From positions 248,001 to 312,000 of the IMG/VR virus record IMGVR_UViG_3300019776_000324: a DNA stretch of 64,000 nt. One strand, given 5' to 3'. The notes beneath the pieces were generated by a model, which saw only the letters and a program-made list of their open reading frames with translations, did not search any database and was not told the DNA's origin. Positions 4,715-44,732 of the stretch are shown in pieces (position 1 is the first letter of the stretch; every line of letters begins with the position of its first letter). A program made the position numbers and the translations under genes.

Positions 4715-7240
4715 ATGTCTTCAATACCAAGTTGGGTCACTCCAGCCGGCACGCTCGGGTCCATACCAGAAGGTGTTTTTTATCAAACACCGCTGGTAGC
4801 TATCTCGGATGCTGATGTATATTACCGAGTTATTGCTGGCAATTTGCCACCTGGTATTCAAATAAACGAAACAGGTGTGTTATCTGGCAACCCACAGATT
4901 GGTGCGGTTATTCAAGGTGTTCCTTTAGATGTTCCTGTTGATACCACTAGTAAATTTGCTGTTCGTGCATTTACTAAACGAGTGATCGACGGAGTTACTG
5001 TAGTTGATAAATTAGCCGATAGAACTTTTACATTAACAGTAACAGGTCAAAGCGAAGTTACTTGGACTACTCCTCCTGGCCAAATTGCTACTTACTATGA
5101 TGGACAACAGATTACTGATCTTGCTGTTGATTATTATGATCCAGATGTATATGCAATCAATGTAGTTACCCTAATTGCTGGTTCACTGCCTACAGGATTA
5201 ACTATTTCTGCGGCAGGAATAATTTCTGGATACATTAGCCCTAATCCAGATTCAACTGTGACCTCTACAGATTATTCTTTTACATTACGAGTTACCAATG
5301 GTGTTACTAGCGATGTTAGAACTTTTAGTATTTTAGTTTATGCTCGCAGTACTATGACTGCAGATAACACTAACATTACCGCTGACAATACATTTATTAC
5401 TGCTGACGCCAGCCCATTACAACCACCAATTATTACAACCCCAGAAGGAAGTATTGGATCTGTTCGTAGTGATAATTTCTACGCATTTCAATTTGCTGGC
5501 TTGGACTTTGCCGGTAATGAATTTCAATTCATTGGCACCGATCTGCCACCAGGATTGACACTAGATCCTAATTCTGGTTGGCTTTATGGATATATTCCAT
5601 TTGAAGGATTAAGTTCAACTACCTATACATTTAGTGTTATAGCCAAAGAAGTTTTGAATCCTGATGTGTTTAGCGATCCTTACTACTATTCATTGACTAT
5701 CAATGGCCCAGTTAACTCTGATGTTATCTGGTTAACCGATAGCGACTTAGGAACCATCGACAATGGCGCCACCAGCACCTTGTATGTTGAGGCTGTGAAT
5801 GTTGCTGGTCTAGGATTACAATATCAATTACTGTCAGGTAGTGATAGTTTATTACCTCAAGGTTTACAATTACTATCGTCTGGACATATTGCTGGTCGTG
5901 TTAGTTTTGATACTTTTGCTGTTGATGGCGGCGCCACTACATTTGATGTGGATCTTAATACAGTTCGACAACCAACTACATTTGACATGGTGCATACATT
6001 TACTGTGAATGCGTATAGCGTAAATGGTATAGTTAATGTTAATAAAACTTTTTCAATTCGTGTGGTCAGAAGATACAACGAACCATATGATAATCTTTAT
6101 ATCCAGGCAATGCCCCCATTCAATGACAGAGCAATACTAGATAGCTTGTTACAGGATACTAGTATATTTCCTCCTGCTCTAATTTATCGAGGTGATGATC
6201 CAAACTTTGGCATAGCAAAAAAAGTTGTGTATCCACATGCCTATGGTCTTACTGTTGCGACATTAGATGAGTATGTGGCTAGTTTAAATTTAAACCACTA
6301 CTGGAAAGATTTGACACTGGGCGAAATTAAAACTGCTCGTGCATTAGATGATGTAGGTAATGTTATCTACGAAGTTGTTTACAGCGAAGTCATTGACAAT
6401 TTAGTAAACAACAGTGGTACCAGTGTAGGCAAGGAAGTAAATTTAGCATTTCCAATCGCTGAACCTGATTCAACTGAAACTTCAAAGGTATATCCAAATA
6501 GTCTATTTGACATGCGTAATCAAGTTATTGATGTTGTTGGACAAACCAGTAATGTATTACCTCGCTGGATGTTGAGCCGTCAAGCCAACGGACAGACTCT
6601 GGGCTTTACTAATGCTTGGGTAATTGCTTATACCAATCCTGGACAAAGTGGACAAGTTGCATATAATATACAACAACGATTTACTCAGCAGTTAAATTTA
6701 ATTGACTTTGAAGCAGATCGTTATGAATTAGATAATCTGTTGACTAAAAACTGGGACAGAGAAAATCAACACTGGATTCCTCGACCTCCTACCATTACTA
6801 CTTTTGATTTCGACACTTATTACATTATTACCTCTTTCAATGGTGGTGTAGGATATAGAGGAATCGAAACAGCGTCAAATGGAGACATTACCTATCCAGG
6901 CGATCAAATCAAAATTTTAGGCAGTCAAATTGGCGGCCAAGATGGTGTAAATGATATTATAATCACAGTATCCGGAGTCAACTCAATTGGCACAATTCAA
7001 ACTGTATTTTATAACCAACTTTCACCATTGACCACAGTGGGCAATAATTACGATAATATTGCTGGAACCAATATCTCGGGTGTTGGTAACGGAGCAATTT
7101 GGAATATTGAATCAGCAGATGGAACACCAACCGTATTTGATGGAAATAGTTTACAGTTTATAGCCCCTGTAGATATGTATTCGTCTACTCAGATATACGA
7201 TAAATACCTCGTATTCCCCAAACGGAACATTTTACAATAA
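4715..7240 (+). CDS. Virion structural protein with putative Ig (He_PIG-like) domains
   Basis: Repeated GxLPxG(L/I)x(I/L)..G.ISG motifs; lies in a structural operon. Confidence 0.65.
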   Translation: MSSIPSWVTPAGTLGSIPEGVFYQTPLVAISDADVYYRVIAGNLPPGIQINETGVLSGNPQIGAVIQGVPLDVPVDTTSKFAVRAFTKRVIDGVTVVDKLADRTFTLTVTGQSEVTWTTPPGQIATYYDGQQITDLAVDYYDPDVYAINVVTLIAGSLPTGLTISAAGIISGYISPNPDSTVTSTDYSFTLRVTNGVTSDVRTFSILVYARSTMTADNTNITADNTFITADASPLQPPIITTPEGSIGSVRSDNFYAFQFAGLDFAGNEFQFIGTDLPPGLTLDPNSGWLYGYIPFEGLSSTTYTFSVIAKEVLNPDVFSDPYYYSLTINGPVNSDVIWLTDSDLGTIDNGATSTLYVEAVNVAGLGLQYQLLSGSDSLLPQGLQLLSSGHIAGRVSFDTFAVDGGATTFDVDLNTVRQPTTFDMVHTFTVNAYSVNGIVNVNKTFSIRVVRRYNEPYDNLYIQAMPPFNDRAILDSLLQDTSIFPPALIYRGDDPNFGIAKKVVYPHAYGLTVATLDEYVASLNLNHYWKDLTLGEIKTARALDDVGNVIYEVVYSEVIDNLVNNSGTSVGKEVNLAFPIAEPDSTETSKVYPNSLFDMRNQVIDVVGQTSNVLPRWMLSRQANGQTLGFTNAWVIAYTNPGQSGQVAYNIQQRFTQQLNLIDFEADRYELDNLLTKNWDRENQHWIPRPPTITTFDFDTYYIITSFNGGVGYRGIETASNGDITYPGDQIKILGSQIGGQDGVNDIIITVSGVNSIGTIQTVFYNQLSPLTTVGNNYDNIAGTNISGVGNGAIWNIESADGTPTVFDGNSLQFIAPVDMYSSTQIYDKYLVFPKRNILQ

Positions 7241-7253
7241 ATTAGGATAACTT

Positions 7254-8141
7254 ATGACTAGTGCAATTAACCCACAAAATATTGACGGCGCCTACCCAGT
7301 CGCTGGACAAGATAACAATTCACAAGGTTTTCGTGATAACTTTACCAACACGAAAACTAACTTTCAGTATGCAGCTGATGAAATCACAGACCTGCAGAAT
7401 AAAGCTGTATTAAAAGCAGCACTAACAGGCACTACATTAAACAATGACATGCAAGGTGCAGTGTTAAGTAATGCTCAATTACAAGATATGAGCGAAACAG
7501 TTGTACCACTAGGTACAGTCAGCGGTTCACAAACTATTAATTACAGTTTGGGTTCATATCAAACTTTAACTACTAACGGATCAGTTAGTTTAGCGTTTAG
7601 TAATTTTCCAGCAGCAGGCACAGCTGGAAGTGTTACTGTTCAAGTTACAGTTGCAAGTGCTACTCATACATTAACTCTTCCTGCGGCAGTATCAGTTAAT
7701 AATATCGGTATCCAAGGTTTAAATACTTCAACAAATACTATAAGTTTTGCTGCTCCTGGTGTGTATAGTTTCCAATTTATTACCAGCAATGGTGGCACAA
7801 CTATTACAGTTAACGAAACTAATAAACTTTTACAAGCATTAAATGGAAGTGGTGAGACTTTGCCATCATCAGGTTTCCCATGTGATTTAGGAGTTACCAG
7901 TACTAAATTTGCAACCACAGGTTCATGGACAGCAACATTGGGCAACGGTGTAGCTGGTCAGGTCAAAGACTTTATTATGATTGCAGACGGTGGCGATATG
8001 GTTATCACTGTGGCCAATGCTGGATGGAAAACTTCTGGATCTGGCACAATGACATTCAATGACATTGGTGATTCTTGTATATTGCGCTTTGCTGCTAGTA
8101 AATGGTATTGCATAGGTAATAACGGCGTTGTATTTGCCTAA
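7254..8141 (+). CDS. Putative virion structural protein
   Basis: YPVAGQDNNSQGFRDNF N-terminus, beta-rich Thr/Ser/Gly composition, last gene of the structural run, AGGA RBS. Confidence 0.55.
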   Translation: MTSAINPQNIDGAYPVAGQDNNSQGFRDNFTNTKTNFQYAADEITDLQNKAVLKAALTGTTLNNDMQGAVLSNAQLQDMSETVVPLGTVSGSQTINYSLGSYQTLTTNGSVSLAFSNFPAAGTAGSVTVQVTVASATHTLTLPAAVSVNNIGIQGLNTSTNTISFAAPGVYSFQFITSNGGTTITVNETNKLLQALNGSGETLPSSGFPCDLGVTSTKFATTGSWTATLGNGVAGQVKDFIMIADGGDMVITVANAGWKTSGSGTMTFNDIGDSCILRFAASKWYCIGNNGVVFA

Positions 8142-8146
8142 ATCGT

Positions 8147-8175
8147 TTGACTTTTAGATGGATGTGCTGTACAAT
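8147..8175 (+). promoter_or_regulatory. sigma70-type promoter TTGACT-17-TACAAT
   Basis: Near-consensus with 17-nt spacer, 6 nt before ATG 8182. Confidence 0.7.
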
Positions 8176-8181
8176 TACAGT

Positions 8182-8406
8182 ATGGAACATCCATTAATAC
8201 CCAATCTTGACAGTTTAACTGAACAAGAACTACTTGATAAAATTTCAGAACTAAATCGAAAACTTAGTATTGCCTACGGAACTGGCAATGCTTATCTTTG
8301 CAATCAACTAAGAATGGCTATTGAAAGTTTTCAAACCAAATATCGAGAAAAGATCCGTGGTGGCGACAATGGCAATAACTTTGATGATGTGATTGATATT
8401 TCATGA
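8182..8406 (+). CDS. Hypothetical protein
   Basis: ORF track; start reassigned to MEHPLIP downstream of promoter; ATGA overlap with next gene. Confidence 0.7.
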   Translation: MEHPLIPNLDSLTEQELLDKISELNRKLSIAYGTGNAYLCNQLRMAIESFQTKYREKIRGGDNGNNFDDVIDIS

Positions 8407-9005
8407 ATGTAAGAATAGCACAATTAACTAGTTTTAATGCTGGAAACTGGCACGACGACTCATTAGAAATGACCGAGTACACAGTCAAGCTATGGATGAT
8501 CACTCAGACTTATAATGCACTTGAACAGAATATTGCTATCAGTCGAGCCAAACATTTTATTTTTGATCAAATTGAAAATACTATATTCATTGATTCAGAT
8601 GATGTAACCAAGGCAACAGCACTTGCTAGTGCCGGCCTTGATATTACAACTTTACCAGGAGACCCTGGGGATCAATTGGTTGGTATTATGCTATTTCATA
8701 AATTAAATGCTATAATGGAAGACCGCATCAAGATTGTTGAAATTGAAATTTCGTCAGGCAATGGTATAATTTATCTGCATGGTGAAAACGAAACCTCAGA
8801 TGACTTGTCTATTCCAGACTGGTGGGCAGCAGCAGATCTTGTACACTCTGACTTGCAATTGATCGAGTCCGACAAAGTTGTAACCATGCAACAAACCAGT
8901 GCCTGGAGAGATGTTGGACTAGCATGGCCCGACGAAGTAGTAGATATGGAACCTGGAAATACTGTAGTTTTTGCAAATTTTAAATCAACTAATGATACAG
9001 AATAA
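8403..9005 (+). CDS. Hypothetical protein
   Basis: 200-aa ORF coupled to neighbours. Confidence 0.7.
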   Translation: MNVRIAQLTSFNAGNWHDDSLEMTEYTVKLWMITQTYNALEQNIAISRAKHFIFDQIENTIFIDSDDVTKATALASAGLDITTLPGDPGDQLVGIMLFHKLNAIMEDRIKIVEIEISSGNGIIYLHGENETSDDLSIPDWWAAADLVHSDLQLIESDKVVTMQQTSAWRDVGLAWPDEVVDMEPGNTVVFANFKSTNDTE

Positions 9006-34993: not shown

Positions 34994-35180
34994 ATTTGTT
35001 AACTTGACTGAAGAAGCAAGTGCTTGTAGCACCACAGCAGGCAGTATTGCTCCGGTAAGTTCACCCATTGGTGGAATGGTCGCAAGAAATGCAGGATCTT
35101 TCTTTGCTGGTAAATACACTACTGACGATGCAACGCCTAATACGCCTGCAGAGTACAAAAAGTATAAACGGAAGAAATAA
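34980..35180 (+). CDS. Small putative head-internal protein
   Basis: MRLYEFVNLTEE leader; basic C-terminus. Confidence 0.6.
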   Translation: MRLYEFVNLTEEASACSTTAGSIAPVSSPIGGMVARNAGSFFAGKYTTDDATPNTPAEYKKYKRKK

Positions 35181-35620
35181 TGTTAGCTGATTTATTAAAA
35201 ACTTACTTGGCCAGTACATTTTCGTACTATTTAAAAGCCCACATGTTCCATTGGAATGTGGAAGGTCCAGACTTTGGCGAACTACATGGTTTCTTTTCAC
35301 AAATTTATGAAGATGCGTTTGATGCAGTAGATCCTATTGCTGAATTTATCCGTACTGCAGAAGAATATGCCCCAGGAAGCCTAACCCGCTTTCATGAATT
35401 AACACAAATACAGGACCAAACCAAGGTCCCTCGTGCCCGATTAATGTTAGAAGAATTACTCGCAGATACACAGACCATGAAAGATCTAAGCAAACAAGTG
35501 TTTGATGTTTCAACCCAAGAAGGTCGTGATGATGTTGCAAACTTTGCCGCAGATAGACTAAGCCAACACGGCAAGTACATGTGGCAACTTAAGAGTTATT
35601 TGAAAGACGCTAGGGCATGA
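35180..35620 (+). CDS. dps: Dps family ferritin-like DNA-protection protein
   Basis: K.H.FHWNVEG..F.ELH..F..IYE.....D.IAE; H.KY.WQL. Confidence 0.92.
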   Translation: MLADLLKTYLASTFSYYLKAHMFHWNVEGPDFGELHGFFSQIYEDAFDAVDPIAEFIRTAEEYAPGSLTRFHELTQIQDQTKVPRARLMLEELLADTQTMKDLSKQVFDVSTQEGRDDVANFAADRLSQHGKYMWQLKSYLKDARA

Positions 35621-35623
35621 TCA

Positions 35624-36244
35624 ATGCAAGACCATAACGATATATACTCCATTGTAGAACGCCTCCGTATGTTGGAGGAAGGTCTTGACAAGAATCAAAA
35701 GAGTGTCAATCAACTCAGTGCCACATTTAAACCAAAAACAGTAGCAGTACTCACAGCCAAAACAGATCCTAAAAATCCTCTAGCCGGCAAGCTGGTTGGT
35801 GGCGCAGAAGAAAGCGTAGAGTCCGACGAAGAGCCATTGGAAGAAGCTATTACTAGCGAAGATGTGCTGGACAAAGTTAAAAAATCATTTGCTGATTATC
35901 TAAGTAATATAGCAGATGAAATCAAACAAGATTCCGATCTCAAAGACAAGAAAAAAGAAGATACTGATCTAAAGCAAAAAGAAAAGAAGGATCGTGATCT
36001 TGTTTCTAAACAAATCGATGAACATGGTACTAATCTTCCAGAAGCAGTCAAATGTGTCACTATGGAAGATGGTCGCGTTTGTGAAATACACGGCGATGAC
36101 AACTCTGGGTTTGAGATCCACCACGGTAACCGTAGTTTACCAACAAGATTTAAAGATTTAGCTGAAGCCGAAATGGCTTTAGAAATGTTTATGAGTCGTC
36201 GTCGTAAGACTGACGAAGCACAAGATTATATTGAAGAAGCTTAA
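35624..36244 (+). CDS. Hypothetical acidic/charged protein
   Basis: 206-aa ORF ending DYIEEA. Confidence 0.65.
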   Translation: MQDHNDIYSIVERLRMLEEGLDKNQKSVNQLSATFKPKTVAVLTAKTDPKNPLAGKLVGGAEESVESDEEPLEEAITSEDVLDKVKKSFADYLSNIADEIKQDSDLKDKKKEDTDLKQKEKKDRDLVSKQIDEHGTNLPEAVKCVTMEDGRVCEIHGDDNSGFEIHHGNRSLPTRFKDLAEAEMALEMFMSRRRKTDEAQDYIEEA

Positions 36245-36256
36245 GGAAAAAAAGAA

Positions 36257-38758
36257 ATGAATTTGTTAAACCTATTTGAAGGACGCGAACCGCATCAACA
36301 AGCTATTGACAAGCTGGAACAGGCTCGTATTGATCACTTAAAAGAAAAAATGGATTACTATGCTAAACACGGCATGGTAGAACAATTCAAAAAAGCCAAA
36401 GCTGAACACGACAGTTATTTTAAAGTTCAAGATGAGTGCATGGGATATGGTAGTGTTGTTGGCGAACAAGGCATTCCTGGTTCAGTACCAACAGAAAAGA
36501 TTCCTGGCAAAGAAGACTTACTCCGAGGCAAGGGTCGTAGCTACTACGAATCAGTCGAAGAAGTTAATCCAAGTAAAAAAGTATTCAAAGACAAAGCTGG
36601 TAAACCAGTAGGAGAGATTGGTATTGATCCTGAATCAAGTCCTGGCAATAGCGAATGGTATGTATATCATTACGGCACAGGTTATAGTGTTGTTGGATTC
36701 GATAGTGCCGCAGAAGCTAAACGCGAATTAATGTATGTTCACAAGCATCCAGAAGCGGTCGAAGGGCACGAATCAACATTTGACGAAGCTGGTATTCCTG
36801 GTAATGTTCCAGTTGAAAAGATTCCAGGTAAAGAAGATTTGCTAAAGGGCAAGGGTCGTAGCTACTACGAAGCCCAAGACCAAAAAAAAAATTCTGAAGA
36901 AGTAGATAAGCTACAAACAGCTGCAAGAGAGTTTATAGAATTAATAAACGATCGCACTGGTCCTATCTATAAAGCATATTATCGTAGTTTTCCAAAAGGT
37001 TCTGCACTAGAAGCAGAACTGCGTAAACGCATTGCCGCCAAGTATGGCGTTGCAGAAAAAGAACTTGCTAACGCCGAAGCTGGCGATCGTGCTCGTCGCA
37101 TGTTTGGTAATAAACTCAATGAAGATCAAAAGTTACATGTAGGTGATCCTATCATTGTTACAGCTCCTAATGAGTTTGAAGGCAAGACTGGTGAGATTGC
37201 AGAGTTCAGCCCAAGTGGCGCATTTGTTGTTGTAAACTTATACAACCACGGTGAACACAGCATGCACCTGAGTGATGTTGAGTTTAATCAATATGCCGCA
37301 GATCAAGAAGATGAAGATGACTGGTACGACGACGGTGCAGAAGATACATTAGAAGAAGAACAAAAAGAATTCCTGTACACAGTTGAATGCGATGGCTACA
37401 ACAAAGGTAACTTTGTTAATAAAAACGACGCAATCTTTAGTGCTCAGTACATGATCTACTATGGCGAAAAAGAATATAACAAGATTGAAGTTATTGAACT
37501 TAAAACAGGTGATGTAATCTGGGAATGGCATGGCAAGAAAGCAGACAACGATGTTGCTCCTACAGAAGTAGAAGTAGGTGAAGGTTGGAGCAACAAGATG
37601 GTTGCTCAAAGAACCGGTCAAGCTCCAACACCATATTCAGTTTATATCAAAGGTAAAGAATGGAAGAGCTTTGCTGACGATGATCATGCTGAAAATGTAG
37701 CTAACAAGTTAAGAGCTAAATTCAAAGCAGAAGGTAAAGATCCTAGTGTTATTACTATTGCACCTACTGACTACGATAAAGATCTTAAAGAATTCGCACC
37801 AGGTGGCGGATATCAAGAACCACCTCCACCAGTATTAAAGAAAAAAGATCCGTTTGATGACGATGATCGTAGTATCTATCCACGCAAGATTCAACAACTA
37901 TTAACCAGTGGTGCTAAAGTAGATAGCCGTGTTCCTGGTGCTATGGGACACATTATTGCAGCTAATGGCGAAATGATTAGAATGAAGCCATTGAACAAGC
38001 CATACAGCCAAAAGAAATATGCTTGGTATATTGATCAAGAGCGTGATGATAAACTTTTATTAAAGCAAGTTGAACCTAACCATTATGTATTGTATGATCG
38101 TGATTGGTTGCCACAAGGCACAACAGAGGCTGCTAATCCAGCACAACAGGCCGCTATTGCCGTTGCTATGAAGAAGGCTGGCAAGAAACCTAAGAGTGTT
38201 GATGAAGGTATCATGGATGTTGTTAAACAAACATTCAACGACAATGTAGTAGGTTGGCCAATGGGCACTTCTACTGAACAGTTTATACAAGGTTGGGCTA
38301 GAGATATTAAAAATCGCACAGGAAAAAATGTTCCAGTAGAAAAGTTAACACAGTTGTACAATAACTATGTTAAGCGTTCTGGTGAACTTATGCAATCACA
38401 TGGCACCACTAACGAAGCTGAAACAGATTATTCTAAGCGTCGCCAGCGTGAGCGTGATGTAGATGCAGGTAAGCCCGTAGCAAAACAGCGCCAACCCAAG
38501 ATGACTGATTATCAAAAGCGCCGTGCTCAGCAGAAGAAAGAAATGGAACTAGGCGAGGATCAAGACACTAGTGGTGTTGAGAGCGCAATTATTCGTCGTA
38601 TTATGGTAGCACACACAGACTTGTTACAACAGTTTGGCCCAGAAAAAGTCATGCAGGCCGCAGAAGAAGTTGCTTACAATGTAGGCGATGTTGACGAAAT
38701 TGGTACCAGTGATGTCAGTGCTTGGGTACACGAAGTCAAACAAATCCTTGGTGCCTAA
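36257..38758 (+). CDS. Modular polyprotein-like head protein
   Basis: MNLLNLFEG leader; many short modules separated by xxE junctions; duplicated 27-aa unit; KOW/SH3-like module LHVGDPIIV..GK.G.I. Confidence 0.65.
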   Translation: MNLLNLFEGREPHQQAIDKLEQARIDHLKEKMDYYAKHGMVEQFKKAKAEHDSYFKVQDECMGYGSVVGEQGIPGSVPTEKIPGKEDLLRGKGRSYYESVEEVNPSKKVFKDKAGKPVGEIGIDPESSPGNSEWYVYHYGTGYSVVGFDSAAEAKRELMYVHKHPEAVEGHESTFDEAGIPGNVPVEKIPGKEDLLKGKGRSYYEAQDQKKNSEEVDKLQTAAREFIELINDRTGPIYKAYYRSFPKGSALEAELRKRIAAKYGVAEKELANAEAGDRARRMFGNKLNEDQKLHVGDPIIVTAPNEFEGKTGEIAEFSPSGAFVVVNLYNHGEHSMHLSDVEFNQYAADQEDEDDWYDDGAEDTLEEEQKEFLYTVECDGYNKGNFVNKNDAIFSAQYMIYYGEKEYNKIEVIELKTGDVIWEWHGKKADNDVAPTEVEVGEGWSNKMVAQRTGQAPTPYSVYIKGKEWKSFADDDHAENVANKLRAKFKAEGKDPSVITIAPTDYDKDLKEFAPGGGYQEPPPPVLKKKDPFDDDDRSIYPRKIQQLLTSGAKVDSRVPGAMGHIIAANGEMIRMKPLNKPYSQKKYAWYIDQERDDKLLLKQVEPNHYVLYDRDWLPQGTTEAANPAQQAAIAVAMKKAGKKPKSVDEGIMDVVKQTFNDNVVGWPMGTSTEQFIQGWARDIKNRTGKNVPVEKLTQLYNNYVKRSGELMQSHGTTNEAETDYSKRRQRERDVDAGKPVAKQRQPKMTDYQKRRAQQKKEMELGEDQDTSGVESAIIRRIMVAHTDLLQQFGPEKVMQAAEEVAYNVGDVDEIGTSDVSAWVHEVKQILGA
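36470..36871 (+). repeat. Duplicated 81-nt/27-aa unit GIPG.VP.EKIPGKEDLL.GKGRSYYE
   Basis: Copies at 36470-36550 and 36791-36871; last 24 nt identical. Confidence 0.9.
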
Positions 38759-39378
38759 TGAGAGCAGAAGAGTTCACAGTTAGTCTAGACGAAAAATTAG
38801 ATGAAATTCTAGTTCGTCTCTGTGAACTTGTAGTTCAAGGTCAAAAAGAAAATCAAGACCTAGGCATGGTGGCTGCCGCTGTATTAGATCCCGATGATAA
38901 TTGTGTAACAGGTATTAACTATCCTGCACGAGATGGTAAGCGTGTTCATGCCGAGCGTGCCGCTATAAACAACTATATTGATCGTTTTGGCCCTGTTCCT
39001 CCTGGCAGTATTGTTATTACAACATTAAGTCCATGCAATCAAGATATGGATAGTCGAGCAGGAGAAAGTTGTCAAGCGTTATTAGATCAACACGGCATTG
39101 ATTCAGTTTACTGTGGTTATGTTGATCCTACACAAGATAAGCATCAAGTCGGCTTAACTGCTAATAAAAAAATACAAGCATTGTGTAAAGCATTCGCTGA
39201 CACTTTTCTTAAAGACAAACTAGACGAACTTGAATTTTTAGGTAGCCCTTGCACCAAAGACTGTTCAGGTCATCGTGCCGGATATGCATGGGCACAAAGC
39301 AAAGGCGGTCGTGTTGCTAACAGTCCATTTAGTCCTAGCTTTAATAACGGCAGTCAGCTTTATGTTGATGGTAAGTAA
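38758..39378 (+). CDS. Zn-dependent cytidine/dCMP-deaminase-fold protein with C-terminal small Cys module
   Basis: VHAERAA and TLSPC..(10)..C; start MRAEEF (TAATG coupling). Confidence 0.8.
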   Translation: MRAEEFTVSLDEKLDEILVRLCELVVQGQKENQDLGMVAAAVLDPDDNCVTGINYPARDGKRVHAERAAINNYIDRFGPVPPGSIVITTLSPCNQDMDSRAGESCQALLDQHGIDSVYCGYVDPTQDKHQVGLTANKKIQALCKAFADTFLKDKLDELEFLGSPCTKDCSGHRAGYAWAQSKGGRVANSPFSPSFNNGSQLYVDGK

Positions 39379-39383
39379 TAAAA

Positions 39384-39563
39384 ATGATTACAACTTTAAT
39401 AAAACAAAAATATTTAACAATCGTACAGACACTTGACAGGAAAGGTCCGTGGATTAAGGAAAATTTTGATCGTAAAGCATTTATTCGACAAATGGCTGAC
39501 GATCATAATACTACCACAGACATGATTGAGAAGTTACTTGAAAATTGCGAATGGTTTAAATAA
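39384..39563 (+). CDS. Small hypothetical protein, 59 aa, not in ORF track
   Basis: MITTLIKQKYL...CEWFK; fills the gap after the deaminase. Confidence 0.5.
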   Translation: MITTLIKQKYLTIVQTLDRKGPWIKENFDRKAFIRQMADDHNTTTDMIEKLLENCEWFK

Positions 39564-39564
39564 A

Positions 39565-39639
39565 ATGAACGACTATCCGATTATTCCAGAACAACAAGGT
39601 GACGAGGATTATAAACTTAATCCTTACGCACCAGTATAG
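39565..39639 (+). CDS. 24-aa peptide MNDYPIIPEQQGDEDYKLNPYAPV
   Basis: ATG 1 nt after the previous stop; ends 1 nt before the structured element. Confidence 0.4.
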   Translation: MNDYPIIPEQQGDEDYKLNPYAPV

Positions 39640-39640
39640 A

Positions 39641-39740
39641 ACACCCCTTAGGATCGTTTAGTTACGGTTTGGTGTAGGCGGCTGCTGCCTGCAAAACATT
39701 TCGGAGTCGTGCCCGATCGCGTGTTTGGCCAAGTGAGCAT
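39641..39740 (+). ncRNA. Candidate structured non-coding RNA, family not recognised
   Basis: GC-rich island in AT-rich DNA; stems ACACC/GGTGT, GGATCGT/ACGGTTT, AGGCGG/CTGCCT, AAACA/TGTTT with inner TCGG/CCGA. Confidence 0.55.
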
Positions 39741-39751
39741 TACCAAATTAC

Positions 39752-39779
39752 TTGCATTGTCTAGATAAACCTGTATAAT
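39752..39779 (+). promoter_or_regulatory. sigma70-type promoter TTGCAT-16-TATAAT
   Basis: Consensus -10; upstream of AGGAGA RBS and ATG 39806. Confidence 0.55.
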
Positions 39780-39805
39780 TAATACATTACTAACAGGAGA
39801 TTTAA

Positions 39806-40066
39806 ATGTCAGATCGCGTTTTTACATCAGAGCAAACCAACAAACTTACACAAATTATCAATGAAGGCATTAGTGTAATGTCCGAAATTGAAACACTCAC
39901 AGGCGGCCTCAACGACACAGTCAAAGCCATTGCTGAAGAATTAGAAATCAAACCAAGCATCTTGAAAAAAGCTATCAAGTTAGCACACAAAGCTGAGTTC
40001 GGTCGTGAACAACAGGATCACGAATTGCTTGAGCAAATTTTAGTACAAGTAGGAAAAACACTGTAA
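39806..40066 (+). CDS. Small helical dsDNA-binding-like protein (T4 DsbA/GapR-like)
   Basis: Helical, D..KAIAEELEIKP.IL.KAIKLAHK pattern. Confidence 0.5.
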   Translation: MSDRVFTSEQTNKLTQIINEGISVMSEIETLTGGLNDTVKAIAEELEIKPSILKKAIKLAHKAEFGREQQDHELLEQILVQVGKTL

Positions 40067-40939
40067 TTGCAAGCAGATTTTAAATTTTTAAATACGAACG
40101 GCGAGATTGTAGATACAGTCAGTGTAGAGTTACTTGATACACCTGCATCACTAGCATGGCAGTACGCCGTTCATTTAAATAATAAAAATCGTAAGATCAG
40201 TTCTCGTAGTACCATAGGTGGTTATTCTAATATTATTAATCAAGCACATGTTGATTCTACCTTTGAAAAAATATGTGCTTGTATCGATCAACTAGCCGAC
40301 ACAGAGTTTCCATATACAGGGTCGTTGCCAGAAACTGCGTTAGATATTGATCAGCAGTTTCTTAATCAATTACACAGATACTTTACTGATAGTTGTTTAG
40401 AAATTTGGAATTATAAATTTAGTGACTTTGCACTACAGATCACACTAAATGAAATTTTTCAGCAACTAAACATTCTAATACACGCAATCGAAAATTACTT
40501 TCCAACTCCTCAAAAACAACAATGGCAAGGATGCGGAAAAGAAATACACTTACACAGCAACGGTGACTCAACTAGCTACGATATAGCACCATTTCGTGGA
40601 TGCCACAGTTACGAAAGAGCAGATCTAGTATTAGACTCTCATATTTTAGGTAAAACTTTAATTGAAAGTTTCATGTGCAATGACAATCCTGCGCATTGGG
40701 ATACTTCAGGGCATGTGCGTACCAGTGGTGGATGTGTGTTTTTATTAACTGATCACCGCCAGCAAATTTACAACAGCAATGAATTCATTGAATGGTTATC
40801 TAGCCATCAAACTAGTAAACAAAAACAGTTTGCTGATTTGCCCTTGGGAAATTTAATTGCAGGGCACCGAGACCGCCTAGATACATTGTTAACTGACAAC
40901 ATGTTTAACAAGTATACATGTGAAATTGCCTTATTGTGA
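40067..40939 (+). CDS. Hypothetical protein
   Basis: 290-aa ORF with LN.LH..F and LN..IH.IE His pairs. Confidence 0.65.
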   Translation: MQADFKFLNTNGEIVDTVSVELLDTPASLAWQYAVHLNNKNRKISSRSTIGGYSNIINQAHVDSTFEKICACIDQLADTEFPYTGSLPETALDIDQQFLNQLHRYFTDSCLEIWNYKFSDFALQITLNEIFQQLNILIHAIENYFPTPQKQQWQGCGKEIHLHSNGDSTSYDIAPFRGCHSYERADLVLDSHILGKTLIESFMCNDNPAHWDTSGHVRTSGGCVFLLTDHRQQIYNSNEFIEWLSSHQTSKQKQFADLPLGNLIAGHRDRLDTLLTDNMFNKYTCEIALL

Positions 40940-41985
40940 TTATAAAACCTCAATTCTTTGGTCACAAACAATATCAAGGCAAATATTGTCTAAGCCCTTT
41001 TTGTATGATACAAATAGAAACCAATGGACAAGTTCGTCTCTGCGGTTGTGCTGCATGGATGCCAGCTACTATCGGCAACATACTTGAAACGCCACTTTCT
41101 GAGTTGTTAGCTACACCGCTGGCGCAATCTATTCGTCAAAGTATTATCAACGGCACTTATCAATTTTGTAATGAAAAAGTTTGCGGGGTCATTCAGAATA
41201 ACGGTTTAAACACTATAGATACTGTTCCGGAAAATATCAAATACCTACTAGAAGATTCAGCTAGATTTCAACTGCCATATGAAATCAGTATTCATGGCGA
41301 CTTTACTTGTAATCTAAGTTGTCCTAGTTGTAGAACTAAAGTTATTAAAGTTGACGACGACAAAGTTGAACAACAAAACAAGGTTGGCGAGATAATTTTT
41401 AATAATTTGTTAGGAGAGCCAACAGATCGCCGCATGCATTTGATGTTAAGCGGCACCGGAGAAGTGTTTGCTAGCCCGATGTTATTAAATTTCATGAATA
41501 AAATAACACTTGATAAGTTTCCTAATGTAGCTTTTAGTATCGGCACCAATGGGTTATTATGCGAAAAGCGATGGGAACGAATTGAGCACTTAGAATCAGC
41601 CATTGAAAAAATTACAGTAAGCATTGATGCTACTTGTGCAGATACCTACGAAAAAATTCGACGAGGTGGCAACTGGGATCAACTATTAACAAATATGAAT
41701 TTCTTAAAAAATAAGAAACAGTTAACTGGTATGAAGTTACACACTCGCATGATTGTTCAAGATGGTAACTACTCTGAGATATTAAAATTTTATGAGTTTT
41801 CTAAACAGTTTGATGCAGATGTTGTTGAGTATTCTCGATTGATCAATTGGGGCACTTGGACTAACGATGAATTTAAATTGCATAATGTTTTTGATGTTGC
41901 TCACCCCAACAGAGATCAAGCACTAGAGTCAATAACAGAATTAAAAAGGTTAACCGATGTGTGGTTTGAAGGAAATTTTAGTTGA
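40936..41985 (+). CDS. Radical SAM protein with N-terminal SPASM/twitch-like domain
   Basis: CNLSCPSC, GTGE.F.S, TNG, VSIDA; N-terminal C.SPF..G.V.LC.C..IGNI. Confidence 0.87.
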   Translation: MIIKPQFFGHKQYQGKYCLSPFCMIQIETNGQVRLCGCAAWMPATIGNILETPLSELLATPLAQSIRQSIINGTYQFCNEKVCGVIQNNGLNTIDTVPENIKYLLEDSARFQLPYEISIHGDFTCNLSCPSCRTKVIKVDDDKVEQQNKVGEIIFNNLLGEPTDRRMHLMLSGTGEVFASPMLLNFMNKITLDKFPNVAFSIGTNGLLCEKRWERIEHLESAIEKITVSIDATCADTYEKIRRGGNWDQLLTNMNFLKNKKQLTGMKLHTRMIVQDGNYSEILKFYEFSKQFDADVVEYSRLINWGTWTNDEFKLHNVFDVAHPNRDQALESITELKRLTDVWFEGNFS

Positions 41986-42074: not shown

Positions 42075-44732
42075 TTGAGTTATATAGATGCACTATTTGA
42101 TCGTGAACACGATCGTATTCATGTTGTAGAACGACGAGATGGAAAGAGATGTTATCAAGAATATCCAGCCAACTATGTGTTCTACTACGAAGACCCTCGC
42201 GGTAAATTCCAAAGTATTTTTAACACACCTGTAAGTAGATTCTCTACTCGCAACAACAAAGAATTTCGCAAAGAGATTCGCATACAGTCAGGCAAGCAAT
42301 TATACGAGTCGGATATCAATCCAATCTTTCGTTGCCTAGAAGAAAACTACAAAGGACAAGACGGTCCTAAATTAAATGTAGCGTTCTTCGACATTGAGGT
42401 GGACTTTGATCCTGATCGCGGATTTAGTCCACCAAGTGATCCGTTCAATGCTATCACTGCTATTTCAGTTTACTTGCAGTGGTTAGATCAGCTAGTCACT
42501 CTAGTAGTTCCACCCAAACATATGAGCACAGAAACTGCTCAGGAAATTGCCAGCGAGTTTGAAAACACCATTATCTTCCAAGACGAAGGTGAAATGTTAA
42601 AAACATTCCTGGACTTGATTGAAGATGCTGATGCACTGTCAGGTTGGAACAGTGAAGGCTTCGATATTCCGTACACAGTTAATCGTGTTACTCGTGTGTT
42701 AAGCAAAGACGACACACGGCGCTTCTGCTTGTGGAATCAATATCCTAAAAAGCGTATGTTTGAACGCTTTGGTAACGAACAAGAAACATATGACTTGATT
42801 GGCCGTGTGCATATGGACTATATGCAACTGTATCGCAAATACACATATGAAGAGCGTCATAGTTATAGCTTGGATGCTATTCTTGAATACGAAGGTCTGG
42901 AAGGCAAGACCAAGTTTGAAGGCACACTGGATCAGCTTTACAATCAAAACTTCAAGACATTTATTGAGTATAACCGACAAGACGTTAACGGGTTGGCACA
43001 GATGGATAAGAAGTTAAAGTTCTTGGATCTTGCCAATACACTGGCGCATGAAAACACAGTGTTGCTACAGACTACCATGGGTGCTGTGGCTGTAACAGAA
43101 CAGGCTATTATTAATGAAGCACACGAGCGTGGCATGGTTGTTCCAAACCGTAAGGAACGCTATTCGGATGAAGACACTCAAGCGGCGGGTGCGTATGTTG
43201 CGTATCCACGCAAGGGCGTTCATGAATATGTCGGGTCGATAGACATTAACTCACTGTACCCTAGTGCGATTCGTGCGCTTAACATGGGACCTGAAACTAT
43301 TGTTGGTCAACTTCGACCAGTAATGACTGATCGCTATATTGCTGACAAGATGCGTAGCGGTAGTAGTTTTGCTGCGGCATGGGAAGGCTTGTTTGGTTCA
43401 TTGGAATTCACAGCAGTAATGGAAATGCAAACAGGCACAGAAATTACTATTGATTGGCAAGGCGGAGAAGAATCAGTTCACAGTGCCGCAGAAGTATGGA
43501 AGATTATCTTTGACAGTAATCAACCTTGGATGATCAGTGCCAACGGAACAATCTTTACCTATGAGCGTGAAGGTGTTATTCCCGGACTATTAAAACGCTG
43601 GTATGCCGAGCGTAAAGAAATGCAGGCTAAACTTAAACAATGTACAACGGCAGAAGATGAAGAATACTGGGATAAACGACAACTCGTTAAAAAGATTAAC
43701 CTTAATAGTTTGTATGGCGCAATTCTTAACCCTGGTTGCCGCTTTTTTGATAAGCGCATTGGACAATCTACCACACTAACTGGTCGTGCTATTGCCAAGC
43801 ATATGGATGCGTATGTAAACGAATGTATTACAGGCAAGTATGACCATGTGGGCGAATCAATCATCTATGGTGATACTGACTCTTGTTACTTTACTGCTTG
43901 GCCTGCTGTCAAGGAAGCAGTAGAGAAGGGCGAGATGGAATGGTCTAAAGATATTGCTGTCCAACTTTACAACAGTATAGCTGATCAAGTCAATGCTAGT
44001 TTCCCAGGATTTATGGAACAGTCATTCCATGTGCCTAGAGAGATGGGCAGTGTGATTAAAGGTGGCCGCGAGATTGTAGCAAGCAAAGGCTTGTTTATTA
44101 CCAAGAAGCGTTATGCTGTCCTGTATTATGACAAAGAAAACAAGCGTGTGGACACACATGGCGAACCAGGCAAAGTAAAAGCCATGGGCTTGGACTTGAA
44201 GCGTAGTGATACTCCTAAGGTTATTCAAGAATTCTTAAGCGAGATCTTAAACGATGTACTGACTGGTAAAACTCGTGAAGAAATCATTGAAAAGATTCGA
44301 AACTTTAAATATGAATTCAAAGAGCGACCAGGTTGGGAGAAGGGTAGTCCCAAGCGTGTAAACAACTTGACCAAGTATGGCAAGGAAGAAGAACGCCTAG
44401 GTAAAGCCAATATGCCAGGACATGTCCGTGCTGCACTTAACTGGAATAATTTGCGTAGAATGAACAGCGACAAGTATAGTTTACAAATTGTTGATGGAAT
44501 GAAAACTATTGTATGTAAACTAAAGCAAAATCCCCTGGGTTGGACCAGCATAGGCTATCCTACAGATGAATTGCATTTACCACAGTGGTTCAAAGAATTA
44601 CCATTTGACGATAGTGAAATGGAAGCAACAGTGGTTGATCAAAAATTAGACAACTTATTAGGTGTGCTAGAATGGGATTTAAAGTCGGCCACTAATACTG
44701 AAAACACCTTCCAAAGTTTATTCGAGTTCTAA
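42075..44732 (+). CDS. polB: Family B DNA polymerase (T4 gp43-like)
   Basis: Exo FDIE, GWN..FDIPY, YN.QDV; Pol DINSLYPS, K...NSLYG, YGDTDS, KKRY; TTG start. Confidence 0.97.
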   Translation: MSYIDALFDREHDRIHVVERRDGKRCYQEYPANYVFYYEDPRGKFQSIFNTPVSRFSTRNNKEFRKEIRIQSGKQLYESDINPIFRCLEENYKGQDGPKLNVAFFDIEVDFDPDRGFSPPSDPFNAITAISVYLQWLDQLVTLVVPPKHMSTETAQEIASEFENTIIFQDEGEMLKTFLDLIEDADALSGWNSEGFDIPYTVNRVTRVLSKDDTRRFCLWNQYPKKRMFERFGNEQETYDLIGRVHMDYMQLYRKYTYEERHSYSLDAILEYEGLEGKTKFEGTLDQLYNQNFKTFIEYNRQDVNGLAQMDKKLKFLDLANTLAHENTVLLQTTMGAVAVTEQAIINEAHERGMVVPNRKERYSDEDTQAAGAYVAYPRKGVHEYVGSIDINSLYPSAIRALNMGPETIVGQLRPVMTDRYIADKMRSGSSFAAAWEGLFGSLEFTAVMEMQTGTEITIDWQGGEESVHSAAEVWKIIFDSNQPWMISANGTIFTYEREGVIPGLLKRWYAERKEMQAKLKQCTTAEDEEYWDKRQLVKKINLNSLYGAILNPGCRFFDKRIGQSTTLTGRAIAKHMDAYVNECITGKYDHVGESIIYGDTDSCYFTAWPAVKEAVEKGEMEWSKDIAVQLYNSIADQVNASFPGFMEQSFHVPREMGSVIKGGREIVASKGLFITKKRYAVLYYDKENKRVDTHGEPGKVKAMGLDLKRSDTPKVIQEFLSEILNDVLTGKTREEIIEKIRNFKYEFKERPGWEKGSPKRVNNLTKYGKEEERLGKANMPGHVRAALNWNNLRRMNSDKYSLQIVDGMKTIVCKLKQNPLGWTSIGYPTDELHLPQWFKELPFDDSEMEATVVDQKLDNLLGVLEWDLKSATNTENTFQSLFEF

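What the first reader, a model, noticed from the sequence alone, without database searches (positions are those of the whole stretch)
39565..39740. Orphan multi-stem RNA directly behind a 24-aa peptide ORF at the late/replication boundary
Seen: a ~100-nt GC-rich island begins 1 nt after the peptide's TAG. It folds into ACACC/GGTGT enclosing a CCTTA bulge and GGATCGT/ACGGTTT, then AGGC-GGCTGCT-GCCT, then AAACA/TGTTT enclosing TCGG-AGTCGTGC-CCGA. The 3' tail AAGTGAGCA could pair (AGCA) with TGCT in the second loop to form a pseudoknot. There is no U-tract and no tRNA cloverleaf, and I do not recognise the family. Candidates are a new ncRNA, ribozyme or sRNA; the peptide could be a leader or a modified-peptide precursor.
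Basis: partly seen in the sequence, partly recalled or inferred. Interest (0 to 1): 0.7.

Follow-up and report, generated by a model that had tools for sequence, protein, structure and literature searches.

The report
Phage RNA antisense to ribosomal helix 69
The spot holds a real, previously undescribed, single-copy structured RNA of uncultured freshwater jumbo phages whose most conserved exposed parts are the exact reverse complement of one of the most conserved pieces of bacterial 23S ribosomal RNA, which suggests that the phage aims an RNA at the host ribosome.

Summary
The window's sequence alone folds no better than shuffles, but comparison settles it: 117 distinct homologues from IMG/VR jumbo-phage contigs share P1, P2, P3, P4/P5 and a P3-loop/3'-tail pseudoknot. 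About 89% of cells are paired, 17 of 19 nested pairs show compensatory changes, and shuffled and slid controls score far lower. Each genome has one copy, always on the gene strand, starting at the stop codon of a variable upstream gene and lying upstream of an 86-aa gene and PolB. Rfam, ARAGORN, GenBank phages and bacterial genomes hold nothing like it.

New finding: the invariant joining segment CCUUAGGACCG is the exact reverse complement of E. coli 23S rRNA 1920-1930. The commonest P5 loop (UUCGCUACC) is the reverse complement of the abutting 1929-1937. P2 and the leader continue the antisense match, so the family covers about 1908-1944 (helix 69 and the start of helix 70). In the window, 39646-39667 matches antisense 1908-1930 at 21 of 23 positions. 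Of all rRNA windows, this site gives the best predicted hybrid.

Best reading (inferred, about 0.4): a scaffolded antisense RNA that pairs with host 23S rRNA at helix 69. The function is untested. The 24-aa ORF is a conserved micro-gene but is not tied to the RNA.

The parts
39635..39740 (+). The whole RNA element (covariance-model match): leader, P1, J1/2, P2, P3, P4/P5, pseudoknot tail
   Evidence: R1 match of 37.6 bits, E 5e-7, the only one in the 344-kb genome. It aligns with 116 other distinct members.
39635..39641 (+). Conserved A-rich leader (UAUAGAA) that holds the upstream stop codon TAG 39637-39639
   Evidence: Consensus W-A-W-A-G-A-A-Y in the family. The stop of the upstream ORF falls in it in most loci. 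It resembles antisense 23S 1938-1944.
39641..39645 (+). P1 5' strand (ACACC), pairs with 39671-39675
   Evidence: All P1 pairs outside the invariant inner C-G pair show compensatory changes.
39646..39656 (+). J1/2 invariant segment CCUUAGGAUCG (family: CCUUAGGACCG), antisense to 23S rRNA 1920-1930
   Evidence: C11 C12 T14 A15 G16 G17 A18 are invariant columns in the protein-anchored set. The family form is the exact reverse complement of E. coli rrlH 1920-1930. The window's U at 39654 would give a U-G wobble.
39646..39667 (+). J1/2 plus P2: 22 nt that are 21/23 (one gap) antisense to 23S rRNA 1908-1930, i.e. helix 69 loop, its 3' strand and the junction
   Evidence: blastn-short alignment. Local score 16, reached by 1 of 1000 dinucleotide shuffles. 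Cofold gain -23 to -24 kcal/mol, the best of all rRNA windows.
39655..39670 (+). P2 hairpin (CGU/ACG core with loop UUAGUU; extends to 7 bp with G-U pairs in the window)
   Evidence: Length varies, and it is absent in about 20 members.
39671..39675 (+). P1 3' strand (GGUGU)
39676..39690 (+). P3 hairpin AGGC-GGCUGCU-GCCU. The loop forms the pseudoknot. CGGCUGCUG is also antisense to 16S 519-527.
   Evidence: P3 is 100% paired, with 3-4 of its 4 pairs covarying. The 16S match is, but the loop varies in 28% of members together with the tail.
39691..39729 (+). P4 (39691-98 with 39722-29) enclosing P5 (39701-04 with 39713-16) and its loop AGUCGUGC ('type B' loop)
   Evidence: P4 and P5 pairs covary. 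Most members carry loop AUUCGCUAC instead ('type A'), which is antisense to 23S 1930-1937.
39730..39739 (+). 3' tail CAAGUGAGCA. A39736-G39737-C39738 pair with U39683-C39682-G39681 of the P3 loop (pseudoknot).
   Evidence: 92-95% paired with compensatory changes. Eleven loop variants each have a matching tail.
39565..39639 (+). 24-aa micro-ORF (MNDYPIIPEQQGDEDYKLNPYAPV), a neighbour and not part of the RNA
   Evidence: Conserved peptide in many loci, directly upstream of the RNA in some and 50-1486 nt away or absent in others.
39752..39779 (+). Promoter-like site of the next gene (TTGCAT, 16 nt, TATAAT preceded by TG), 3' of the RNA
   Evidence: Read. Relatives have TTGACT...TGTATAAT at the same place. 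It falls below the threshold of the simple scan.
39806..40066 (+). 86-aa gene (phrog_12534 / phrog_639), syntenic anchor downstream of the RNA
   Evidence: Downstream on the same strand in 61 of 79 independently found loci and never upstream.

Best explanation
This is a new family of compact (about 80-110 nt) pseudoknotted non-coding RNA. It occurs once per genome in a clade of uncultured freshwater jumbo myoviruses, transcribed on the gene strand between the end of an accessory-gene block and the replication module.

A scaffold (P1, P3 locked to the 3' tail by a pseudoknot, and P4/P5) holds out two single-stranded segments, J1/2 and the P5 loop, plus the P2 hairpin. Together these are antisense to 23S rRNA nucleotides about 1908-1937: the loop and 3' strand of helix 69, the junction, and the 5' strand of helix 70.

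I propose that the RNA works by base-pairing with this segment of host 23S rRNA. The likely sequence is first contact through the exposed J1/2 and loops, then strand invasion of helix 69. The likely target is nascent rRNA, immature 50S or free 50S subunits, where this interface region is accessible. Binding would block or exploit intersubunit bridge B2a, with consequences such as arrested 50S maturation, blocked subunit joining, or exposure of rRNA to nucleases.

Shown: the RNA family, its fold, its copy number and synteny, and the complementarity with its statistics. Inferred: that pairing happens in the cell, and what follows from it.
For: Fold:
- 46 distinct sequences anchored on a neighbouring protein: 89.3% of cells paired, 17 of 19 pairs with compensatory change, covariation score 0.56 against 0.15 shuffled and 0.02-0.11 slid.
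- 79 further sequences: 89.3% paired, score 0.635 against 0.18.
- Pseudoknot 92-95% paired with double changes.

Strand: G-U/U-G cells outnumber A-C/C-A cells 33 to 16, and all genes are on +.

Copy number: one each in the 344-kb and 337-kb complete genomes and in fragments.

rRNA link:
- Exact reverse complements to real E. coli rRNA: 11 nt to 23S 1920-1930 and 9 nt to the abutting 1929-1937.
- The window matches antisense 1908-1930 at 21/23.
- Shuffles reach the window's score in 1 of 1000, and the scores of L009, L080 and L015 in 0 of 600.
- 101 of 117 members have their best rRNA match on antisense 23S, against 11 of 117 shuffled members.
- Leader, J1/2 and P2 are colinear with antisense 1908-1944.
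- The matching positions are the invariant ones. They include base pairs inside P1 and P2 that, unlike their neighbours, hardly ever covary: pair 17-76 is C-G in 38 of 40, and pair 18-74 is C-G in 76 of 78.
- Among all 46-nt windows of 16S and 23S, 1891-1946 gives the best cofold gain: -21 to -24 kcal/mol against a median of -7 to -9.

Feasibility: a synthetic 13-mer PNA against helix 69 invades the hairpin, blocks translation and stops E. coli growth (Kulik 2017, as reviewed in PMC10777018).
Against: - There is no experimental or read-level evidence of binding, of a discrete transcript or of any effect. The metatranscriptome material consists only of contigs of relatives that run past both ends of the RNA.
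- In mature ribosomes much of 1920-1937 is base-paired. From memory, m3-pseudouridine 1915 cannot form a Watson-Crick pair.
- A phage needs ribosomes, so the benefit of disabling them is not obvious.
- Type A members taken singly do not beat shuffles. Their case rests on two abutting matches.
- Type B and C members, the window included, lack the second guide in P5.
- The P2 5' strand and loop have drifted from perfect antisense in most members.
- The similarity could be a relic of a captured rDNA fragment kept for another reason.
- I noticed the match post hoc.
- Genome-wide, exact 13-15-mers shared with rRNA occur by chance.
Confidence: 0.4

Rival explanations
1. The RNA is a structured ncRNA or ribozyme whose function has nothing to do with pairing to rRNA. 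Its conserved segments would bind a phage or host protein or a small molecule, or form a catalytic core, for example to cut the polycistronic transcript at the operon boundary. The antisense similarity to 23S would then be a relic of a captured rDNA fragment, or partly chance.
For: - The fold is elaborate (pseudoknot, five helices, A-rich strand before the tail), more than a plain antisense RNA needs.
- The P5 loop comes in three types, two of them without rRNA complementarity.
- P2 has drifted from perfect antisense.
- The RNA sits exactly at gene boundaries, as processing sites do.
Against: - No known ribozyme or riboswitch model matches, even at E = 10.
- It does not explain why the invariant nucleotides are just those identical to antisense rRNA.
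- It does not explain why a second copy of the adjoining antisense segment sits in the P5 loop, so that the two abut on the target.
- No partner protein gene is consistently adjacent except the 86-aa gene.
Confidence: 0.3
2. The RNA is a cis-acting mRNA element at the junction of two transcription units. It could be a 3' end stabiliser or exonuclease block for the upstream message. It could also be a device coupled to translation termination, since the terminating ribosome must melt P1 and J1/2. That device might tether the departing ribosome through rRNA complementarity, as eukaryotic viral TURBS elements do with 18S rRNA.
For: - It starts 0-4 nt after the upstream stop codon, or the stop is the UAG inside CCUUAGG (8 or more loci).
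- It is followed either by a strong promoter or directly by the next ORF.
- No intrinsic terminator is present.
- Viral mRNA-rRNA complementarity near stop codons has precedent (TURBS, from memory).
Against: - There is only one copy in a 344-kb genome with hundreds of gene junctions.
- Upstream and downstream genes differ from locus to locus, so no particular gene is served.
- ORFs without a Shine-Dalgarno sequence after the RNA are not special, because only 24 of 66 window genes have one.
Confidence: 0.2
3. The RNA is a decoy of a type III antitoxin (ToxI-like) that neutralises a ToxN-type abortive-infection nuclease, as the pseudo-ToxI of phage PhiTE does.
For: From memory, the 36-nt ToxI repeat shares GAUU.GCUACC and UAAGUG.AGCU with the type A P5 loop and the tail. 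My recalled ToxI sequence fits the numbered positions given in PMC3475682. Phage RNA mimics of ToxI are known (same paper).
Against: - No tandem repeats.
- No Rfam ToxI hit at E = 10.
- Covariation shows that the tail pairs with the P3 loop, not with the P5 loop as the ToxI fold would need.
- The element is three times the size of ToxI, and its most conserved part (J1/2) has no ToxI counterpart.
- It appears to be core to the clade rather than sporadic.
Confidence: 0.03

Closest known systems
Antisense hairpin RNAs that attack a structured target through loops (ColE1 RNA I/RNA II, R1 CopA/CopT)
   Same: A folded RNA whose hairpin (P2) is the complement of a target hairpin (helix 69), with adjoining single-stranded complementarity. 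This suggests loop contact followed by an extended duplex of about 20 bp.
   Different: Those RNAs are cis-encoded antisense transcripts of their own target gene. This one is encoded in a phage, its presumed target is the host's 23S rRNA, and the antisense parts are mounted on a pseudoknotted scaffold.
rRNA-directed guide and chaperone RNAs of eukaryotes and archaea (box C/D, box H/ACA, U3 snoRNA)
   Same: A conserved scaffold that presents 7-13-nt invariant segments complementary to universally conserved rRNA. Two guide segments meet on adjacent target nucleotides.
   Different: I saw no C/D or H/ACA boxes and no snoRNA match in Rfam beyond chance. No partner proteins are known. Such guides are not known in bacteria or phages. 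The order of the guide segments is permuted.
Group II intron exon-binding sites EBS2/EBS1
   Same: Two separate loops recognise two adjacent target segments, with the 5' guide pairing to the 5' part of the target. This is the same permuted topology as J1/2 and the P5 loop on 23S 1920-1937.
   Different: There is no intron, no reverse transcriptase in the genome, and the element is about 95 nt rather than over 400 nt.
Synthetic anti-helix-69 PNA oligomers
   Same: The same target: the helix 69 hairpin of 23S rRNA. They show that strand invasion there is possible and stops translation (PMC10777018).
   Different: They are man-made 13-mers with a PNA backbone. The phage RNA is natural, structured, and extends its complementarity 3' of helix 69 to about 1937.
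ToxI antitoxin RNA of type III toxin-antitoxin systems
   Same: A small pseudoknotted RNA linked to phage-host conflict, with two short sequence resemblances (from memory).
   Different: This element is not repeated, has a different pseudoknot partner, has no toxin gene nearby, and is much larger.

Membership tests
Any Rfam 15 family (4227 models, including all known ribozymes, riboswitches, ToxI, HDV-like, tmRNA, SRP, 6S) | Match at the family's gathering score | tested here: not met
   No match in the whole window. At E up to 10, only chance hits that miss or barely touch the element appear, for the window and for a type A member.
tRNA / tmRNA | Cloverleaf or tRNA-like domain detectable by ARAGORN | tested here: not met
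   0 genes in 64 kb.
Intrinsic terminator | GC-rich hairpin followed by a U tract on the transcribed strand | tested here: not met
   No + strand site in 38700-40200. The tails of members are A-rich and are followed by variable sequence.
Type III antitoxin ToxI | Tandem array of about 36-nt repeats | tested here: not met
   No tandem repeat at the element. It is single copy in the genome.
Type III antitoxin ToxI | Adjacent ToxN-family toxin gene | tested here: inconclusive
   Pfam finds no ToxN in the neighbours. The genome-wide PF13958 search was empty, but its control rang nowhere either.
HDV-like ribozyme | Nested double pseudoknot with P1 enclosing the P2 5' strand and P3, and the 3' end pairing to J1/2 | tested here: not met
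   The order of helices from covariation is P1(J1/2, P2)-P3-P4/P5-tail, and the tail pairs to the P3 loop. There is no Rfam HDV hit.
Riboswitch / 5' leader element | Constant position in the 5' UTR of one functional class of genes | tested here: not met
   A promoter lies between the RNA and the next gene in about half of the loci. The neighbours vary: radical SAM, FMN reductase, glycosyltransferase-like, HAD-like and unknown proteins.
rRNA-directed antisense/guide RNA (functional class, not a sequence family) | Conserved single-stranded segments of 7 nt or more that are complementary to conserved rRNA, beyond chance | tested here: met
   Exact reverse complements of 11 and 9 nt, abutting on the 23S target, with shuffle tests and a cofold scan in support.
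rRNA-directed antisense/guide RNA (functional class, not a sequence family) | Physical pairing with rRNA in cells and a consequence for the ribosome | not testable with these tools
   Only Logan contigs of relatives were found in RNA libraries. Complex prediction does not take RNA-only jobs.
Box C/D or H/ACA guide RNA | C/D (RUGAUGA, CUGA) or H/ACA boxes, and a k-turn or pseudouridylation pocket | tested here: not met
   The conserved columns of the family hold no such boxes. snoRNA hits are at E 4-10 and lie upstream of the element, overlapping at most its first bases.

The most novel reading that the evidence does not exclude
Jumbo phages of fresh water carry a dedicated rRNA-directed RNA. 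It would be a scaffolded, multi-segment antisense or guide RNA that recognises the universally conserved helix 69-helix 70 segment of 23S rRNA, and perhaps also the 16S 530 loop through its P3 loop. The phage would use it to remodel, disable or dismantle host large ribosomal subunits. Possible purposes are stopping new ribosome assembly, or opening rRNA to nucleases so that its nucleotides feed replication of a 344-kb genome. This would be the first natural trans-acting RNA known to target rRNA in the bacterial world, and a new mode of host takeover.
Probability: 0.35. Interest if true: 0.95.

Novelty: categorically new. Interest (0 to 1): 0.85.

Why it matters
No natural bacterial or phage RNA is known, to my knowledge or in the literature I searched, that is built to pair with the body of 23S rRNA.

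Helix 69 forms the central intersubunit bridge and takes part in decoding, termination and recycling. It is already pursued as a target for antisense antibacterials. A phage RNA that evolved against it would reveal a new host-takeover strategy. It would also provide a natural design for rRNA-targeting RNAs and a tool for studying late 50S assembly. Because the target sequence is universal, the idea can be tested directly in E. coli.

Even if the rRNA link turns out to be a relic, this remains a well-supported new RNA family: 117 distinct sequences, a pseudoknot, and one copy per genome in a large clade of uncultured jumbo phages.

Tried and rejected
1. Thermodynamics of the single sequence: no signal on either strand. 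Only comparison shows the structure.
2. Rfam at gathering score and at E = 10, and ARAGORN: nothing.
3. BLAST of the region or of family members against GenBank phages: no homologue. The model finds nothing in Sinorhizobium phage Phosso or Atu_ph07, the nearest cultured relatives by PolB.
4. Bacterial and archaeal genomes: one true member on a small MAG contig that is probably phage (L090), and one chance match inside an ORF (L091).
5. Repeated regulatory cassette or terminator: rejected, because there is one copy per genome.
6. Leader peptide or RiPP link to the RNA: the peptide is often absent or distant.
7. Translation enhancer for ORFs without a Shine-Dalgarno sequence: rejected, because such starts are common in this phage.
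8. A target inside the phage genome: no complementary site. The other copies of the 11-mer are chance matches in coding sequence.
9. ToxI mimic: a resemblance from memory, contradicted by the pseudoknot register and the lack of repeats.
10. The 16S 530-loop complementarity of P3: kept only as a possibility. About one 9-mer match is expected by chance, and the loop co-varies with the tail.
11. Partner enzymes in the genome: no RNase III, reverse transcriptase or LAGLIDADG_3.
12. RNA evidence: three RNA-labelled runs hold contigs of relatives across the element, but with flanks on both sides, and DNA carry-over cannot be excluded.
13. RNA-RNA complex prediction: the tool refuses jobs without a protein.

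Full report
**What is in the window.** The window is bases 248001-312000 of a complete 344,244-bp IMG/VR virus with terminal repeats. Its family B DNA polymerase (42075-44732) is closest to those of the jumbo myoviruses Sinorhizobium phage Phosso (50%), Agrobacterium phage Atu_ph07 (46%) and the CBB/GAP32 group (44%). The finding lies between a 24-aa ORF (ATG 39565, TAG 39637-39639) and an 86-aa gene (39806-40066; phrog_12534/phrog_639). Upstream are a dCMP deaminase-like gene and a 59-aa ORF. Downstream are a 290-aa ORF, a radical SAM/SPASM gene and PolB.

**Checking the observation.** By itself this is not more than chance. The minimum free energy of -27.3 kcal/mol is worse than the mean of dinucleotide shuffles (z = +1.07), and the other strand is no better. 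ARAGORN finds no tRNA in the window. Rfam 15 finds nothing at gathering scores, and around the element only chance hits appear at E up to 10.

**Comparative evidence.**
- I fetched relatives through the neighbouring 86-aa protein, so the sampling did not depend on the RNA. There were 598 confirmed loci, of which 80 were kept. Many of them show a recognisably homologous element upstream, with changes that preserve pairing.
- A covariance model built from 16 of them finds 54 matches in 81 sources, all on the gene strand.
- On the 46 distinct sequences, 89.3% of cells form standard pairs and 17 of 19 pairs carry compensatory changes. The covariation score is 0.56, against 0.15 for shuffled partners and 0.02-0.11 for slid partners.
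- A second set came from a DNA pattern scan of IMG/VR. It gave one member in each of 79 of 81 loci, with the same statistics: 89.3% paired and score 0.635 against 0.18.
- In all there are 117 distinct parsed sequences.
- The pseudoknot between the P3 loop and the 3' tail is 92-95% paired and has double changes.
- Eleven loop variants each come with a fitting tail: GGCUGCU with GUGAGC, GGGUGCU with GUGACC, GGACCCU with GUGUC, GGCUACU with GUAGC, GGCCACU with GUGGC, GCCCCCA with UGGGGG, and so on.
- G-U pairs outnumber A-C cells 33 to 16 and all genes run on +, so the + strand is the RNA.

**Anatomy of the family.**
- A conserved A-rich leader that usually holds the upstream stop codon.
- P1 (4-7 bp).
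- An invariant joining segment, CCUUAGGACCG.
- An optional P2 hairpin.
- P3 (4 bp, 7-nt loop), directly abutting P1.
- P4 with a purine-rich internal loop.
- P5, with three kinds of apical loop: type A AUUCGCUAC in most members; type B AGUCGUGC with a 3' bulge, as in the window; and a few plain hairpins.
- An A-rich strand and the tail that closes the pseudoknot.

**Genomic behaviour.**
- There is exactly one copy in the 344-kb genome, one in a second complete genome of 337 kb, and one in each of four fragments.
- In the pattern-derived set, the 86-aa gene lies downstream on the same strand in 61 of 79 loci, 54 to 4766 nt away. PolB lies downstream in 58 of 79. Neither is ever upstream.
- The immediate neighbours vary: the micro-peptide, a 196-aa family, glycosyltransferase-like proteins, an FMN reductase, radical SAM/SPASM enzymes and others.
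- The upstream ORF ends within the first four nucleotides of the element in most loci. In at least eight loci it ends at the UAG inside CCUUAGG.
- The element is followed either by a strong promoter or directly by the next ORF.
- It is absent from GenBank phages and from Phosso and Atu_ph07. Apart from a small, probably mis-binned MAG contig, it is absent from 185,579 species genomes.

**The link to ribosomal RNA.**
The invariant segments looked familiar to me, so I tested them against the real E. coli rrnH operon.
- CCUUAGGACCG is the exact reverse complement of 23S 1920-1930.
- The type A loop UUCGCUACC is the exact reverse complement of 1929-1937, which abuts the first site.
- CGGCUGCUG of P3 is the exact reverse complement of 16S 519-527.
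- In the window itself, 39646-39667 (J1/2 plus P2) matches antisense 23S 1908-1930 at 21 of 23 positions.
- Other members extend the match. CUACCUUAGGACC covers 1921-1933, UUAUAGUUA covers the helix 69 loop 1911-1919, and the leader resembles antisense 1938-1944. The 5' half of the RNA is therefore colinear with antisense 1908-1944.

Statistics:
- Shuffles reach the window's best score in 1 of 1000 trials, and the scores of L009, L080 and L015 in 0 of 600.
- 101 of 117 members have their best rRNA match on antisense 23S, against 11 of 117 shuffled members.
- In a cofold scan over all 46-nt windows of both rRNAs, 23S 1891-1946 gives the largest gain: -21 to -24 kcal/mol against a median of -7 to -9.
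- The matching nucleotides are the invariant ones. They include pairs inside P1 and P2 that, unlike their neighbours, hardly ever covary.

From memory, this 23S stretch is among the most conserved in the molecule. It is the recognition site of the homing endonuclease I-CeuI; two cloning papers print the sequence together with that name. It corresponds to the insertion site of L1931 introns and R2 elements.

Cautions:
- Type A members taken singly do not beat shuffles.
- Exact 13-15-mers shared with rRNA occur by chance across a 344-kb genome.
- The 16S match is weak evidence, because the P3 loop co-varies with the tail in 28% of members.
- I noticed the match post hoc.

**How it most likely works.** I read the RNA as a scaffolded antisense RNA against helix 69 and the start of helix 70. 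The pseudoknotted core would fix the relative position of J1/2, P2 and the P5 loop. J1/2 and the P5 loop pair with adjacent target segments in the permuted order that group II introns use for EBS2/EBS1. P2 is the complement of the helix 69 hairpin, as in antisense systems that start with loop contacts. A synthetic 13-mer PNA against helix 69 invades the hairpin and blocks translation and growth (PMC10777018), so the site can be reached. Nascent or immature 50S, where this region folds late (from memory), would be the easiest target. The consequence cannot be decided here. It could be a block of subunit joining or of 50S maturation, exposure of rRNA to nucleases, or tethering of ribosomes to the message. 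The phage genome has no RNase III, reverse transcriptase, ToxN or LAGLIDADG_3 gene. I put 0.4 on functional pairing with 23S rRNA.

**Rivals.**
- The similarity may be a relic of a captured rDNA piece, and the RNA may act through a protein or a ligand, or as a ribozyme (0.3).
- It may be a cis element of the operon junction, coupled to termination of the upstream ORF (0.2).
- A ToxI-like decoy is contradicted by the pseudoknot register and the lack of repeats (0.03).

**Expression.** No read-level data exist. Three runs labelled as metatranscriptomes hold contigs of relatives, about 95% identical, that span 39636-39747 with flanks on both sides. This shows presence in those libraries but no discrete ends.

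**Verdict.** The element is a new RNA family of high confidence. It has an unexpected and statistically supported antisense relation to the helix 69 region of 23S rRNA, and this makes a new kind of phage-host interaction directly testable.

Noticed in passing
window 39565-39639; also L003, L005, L017, L037, L054, L066, L118, L165, L093, L129 and others: The 24-aa ORF is a conserved micro-protein with the pattern YP(V/I)(Y/I/F)PE...(N/L)PY(A/S)P(V/T)-stop. It is found in many relatives, at or up to 1.5 kb upstream of the RNA. An N-terminal-SPASM ('twitch'-like) radical SAM gene recurs in the same variable block (window 40936-41985; L069, L070). It could be a peptide substrate and its maturase.
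   Followed up: partly
window 39676-39690 (P3): CGGCUGCUG, and in some members 11 nt, is the exact reverse complement of the 16S rRNA 530 loop (517-527), a second universally conserved rRNA site. The closing C-G pair of P3 never varies, but the loop co-varies with the pseudoknot tail. Whether this second complementarity matters is open.
   Followed up: partly
window 39740-39750 and relatives: A motif (C/A)UUUACCAAAA sits between the RNA and the -35 region of the 86-aa gene's promoter. It also occurs at that promoter in loci where the RNA lies elsewhere (L069, L077), sometimes with a GAGC remnant of the RNA tail. It may be an UP element or activator site, and a trace of recombination at the RNA's 3' edge.
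   Followed up: no
whole window: Only 24 of 66 + strand genes have a Shine-Dalgarno-like sequence, and many starts are preceded by A/U-rich sequence (for example AAUAAGUAA). This suggests a host with weak Shine-Dalgarno usage.
   Followed up: no
window 40936-41985: In the radical SAM enzyme, the SPASM/twitch iron-sulfur domain (residues 18-79) lies N-terminal to the radical SAM core (125-288). The best NCBIfam hit is N_Twi_rSAM, well below its cut-off.
   Followed up: partly
window 35180-35620 and 35624-36244: A ferritin/Dps-like gene is followed by a 206-aa ORF with a faint AI2M-like HNH endonuclease signature. This could be a free-standing homing endonuclease in the variable block.
   Followed up: no
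L089 (Atu_ph07) 6001-8970: The PolB of Atu_ph07 is annotated as two adjacent CDS, whereas the window's PolB is a single 885-aa ORF.
   Followed up: no
L030, L113, L171: These are outlier members in which P2 is replaced by a longer hairpin that carries a sense copy CCUAAGG, which could pair with the RNA's own CCUUAGG. L030 also has a different pseudoknot (CCCCC with GGGGG). This may be a self-masking variant of the J1/2 segment.
   Followed up: no
L091 (Desulfurivibrio contig) 3532-3627: The only hit in a cultured bacterium's genome lies inside a 368-aa ORF and scores 16 bits, so it is a chance match to the search pattern.
   Followed up: yes
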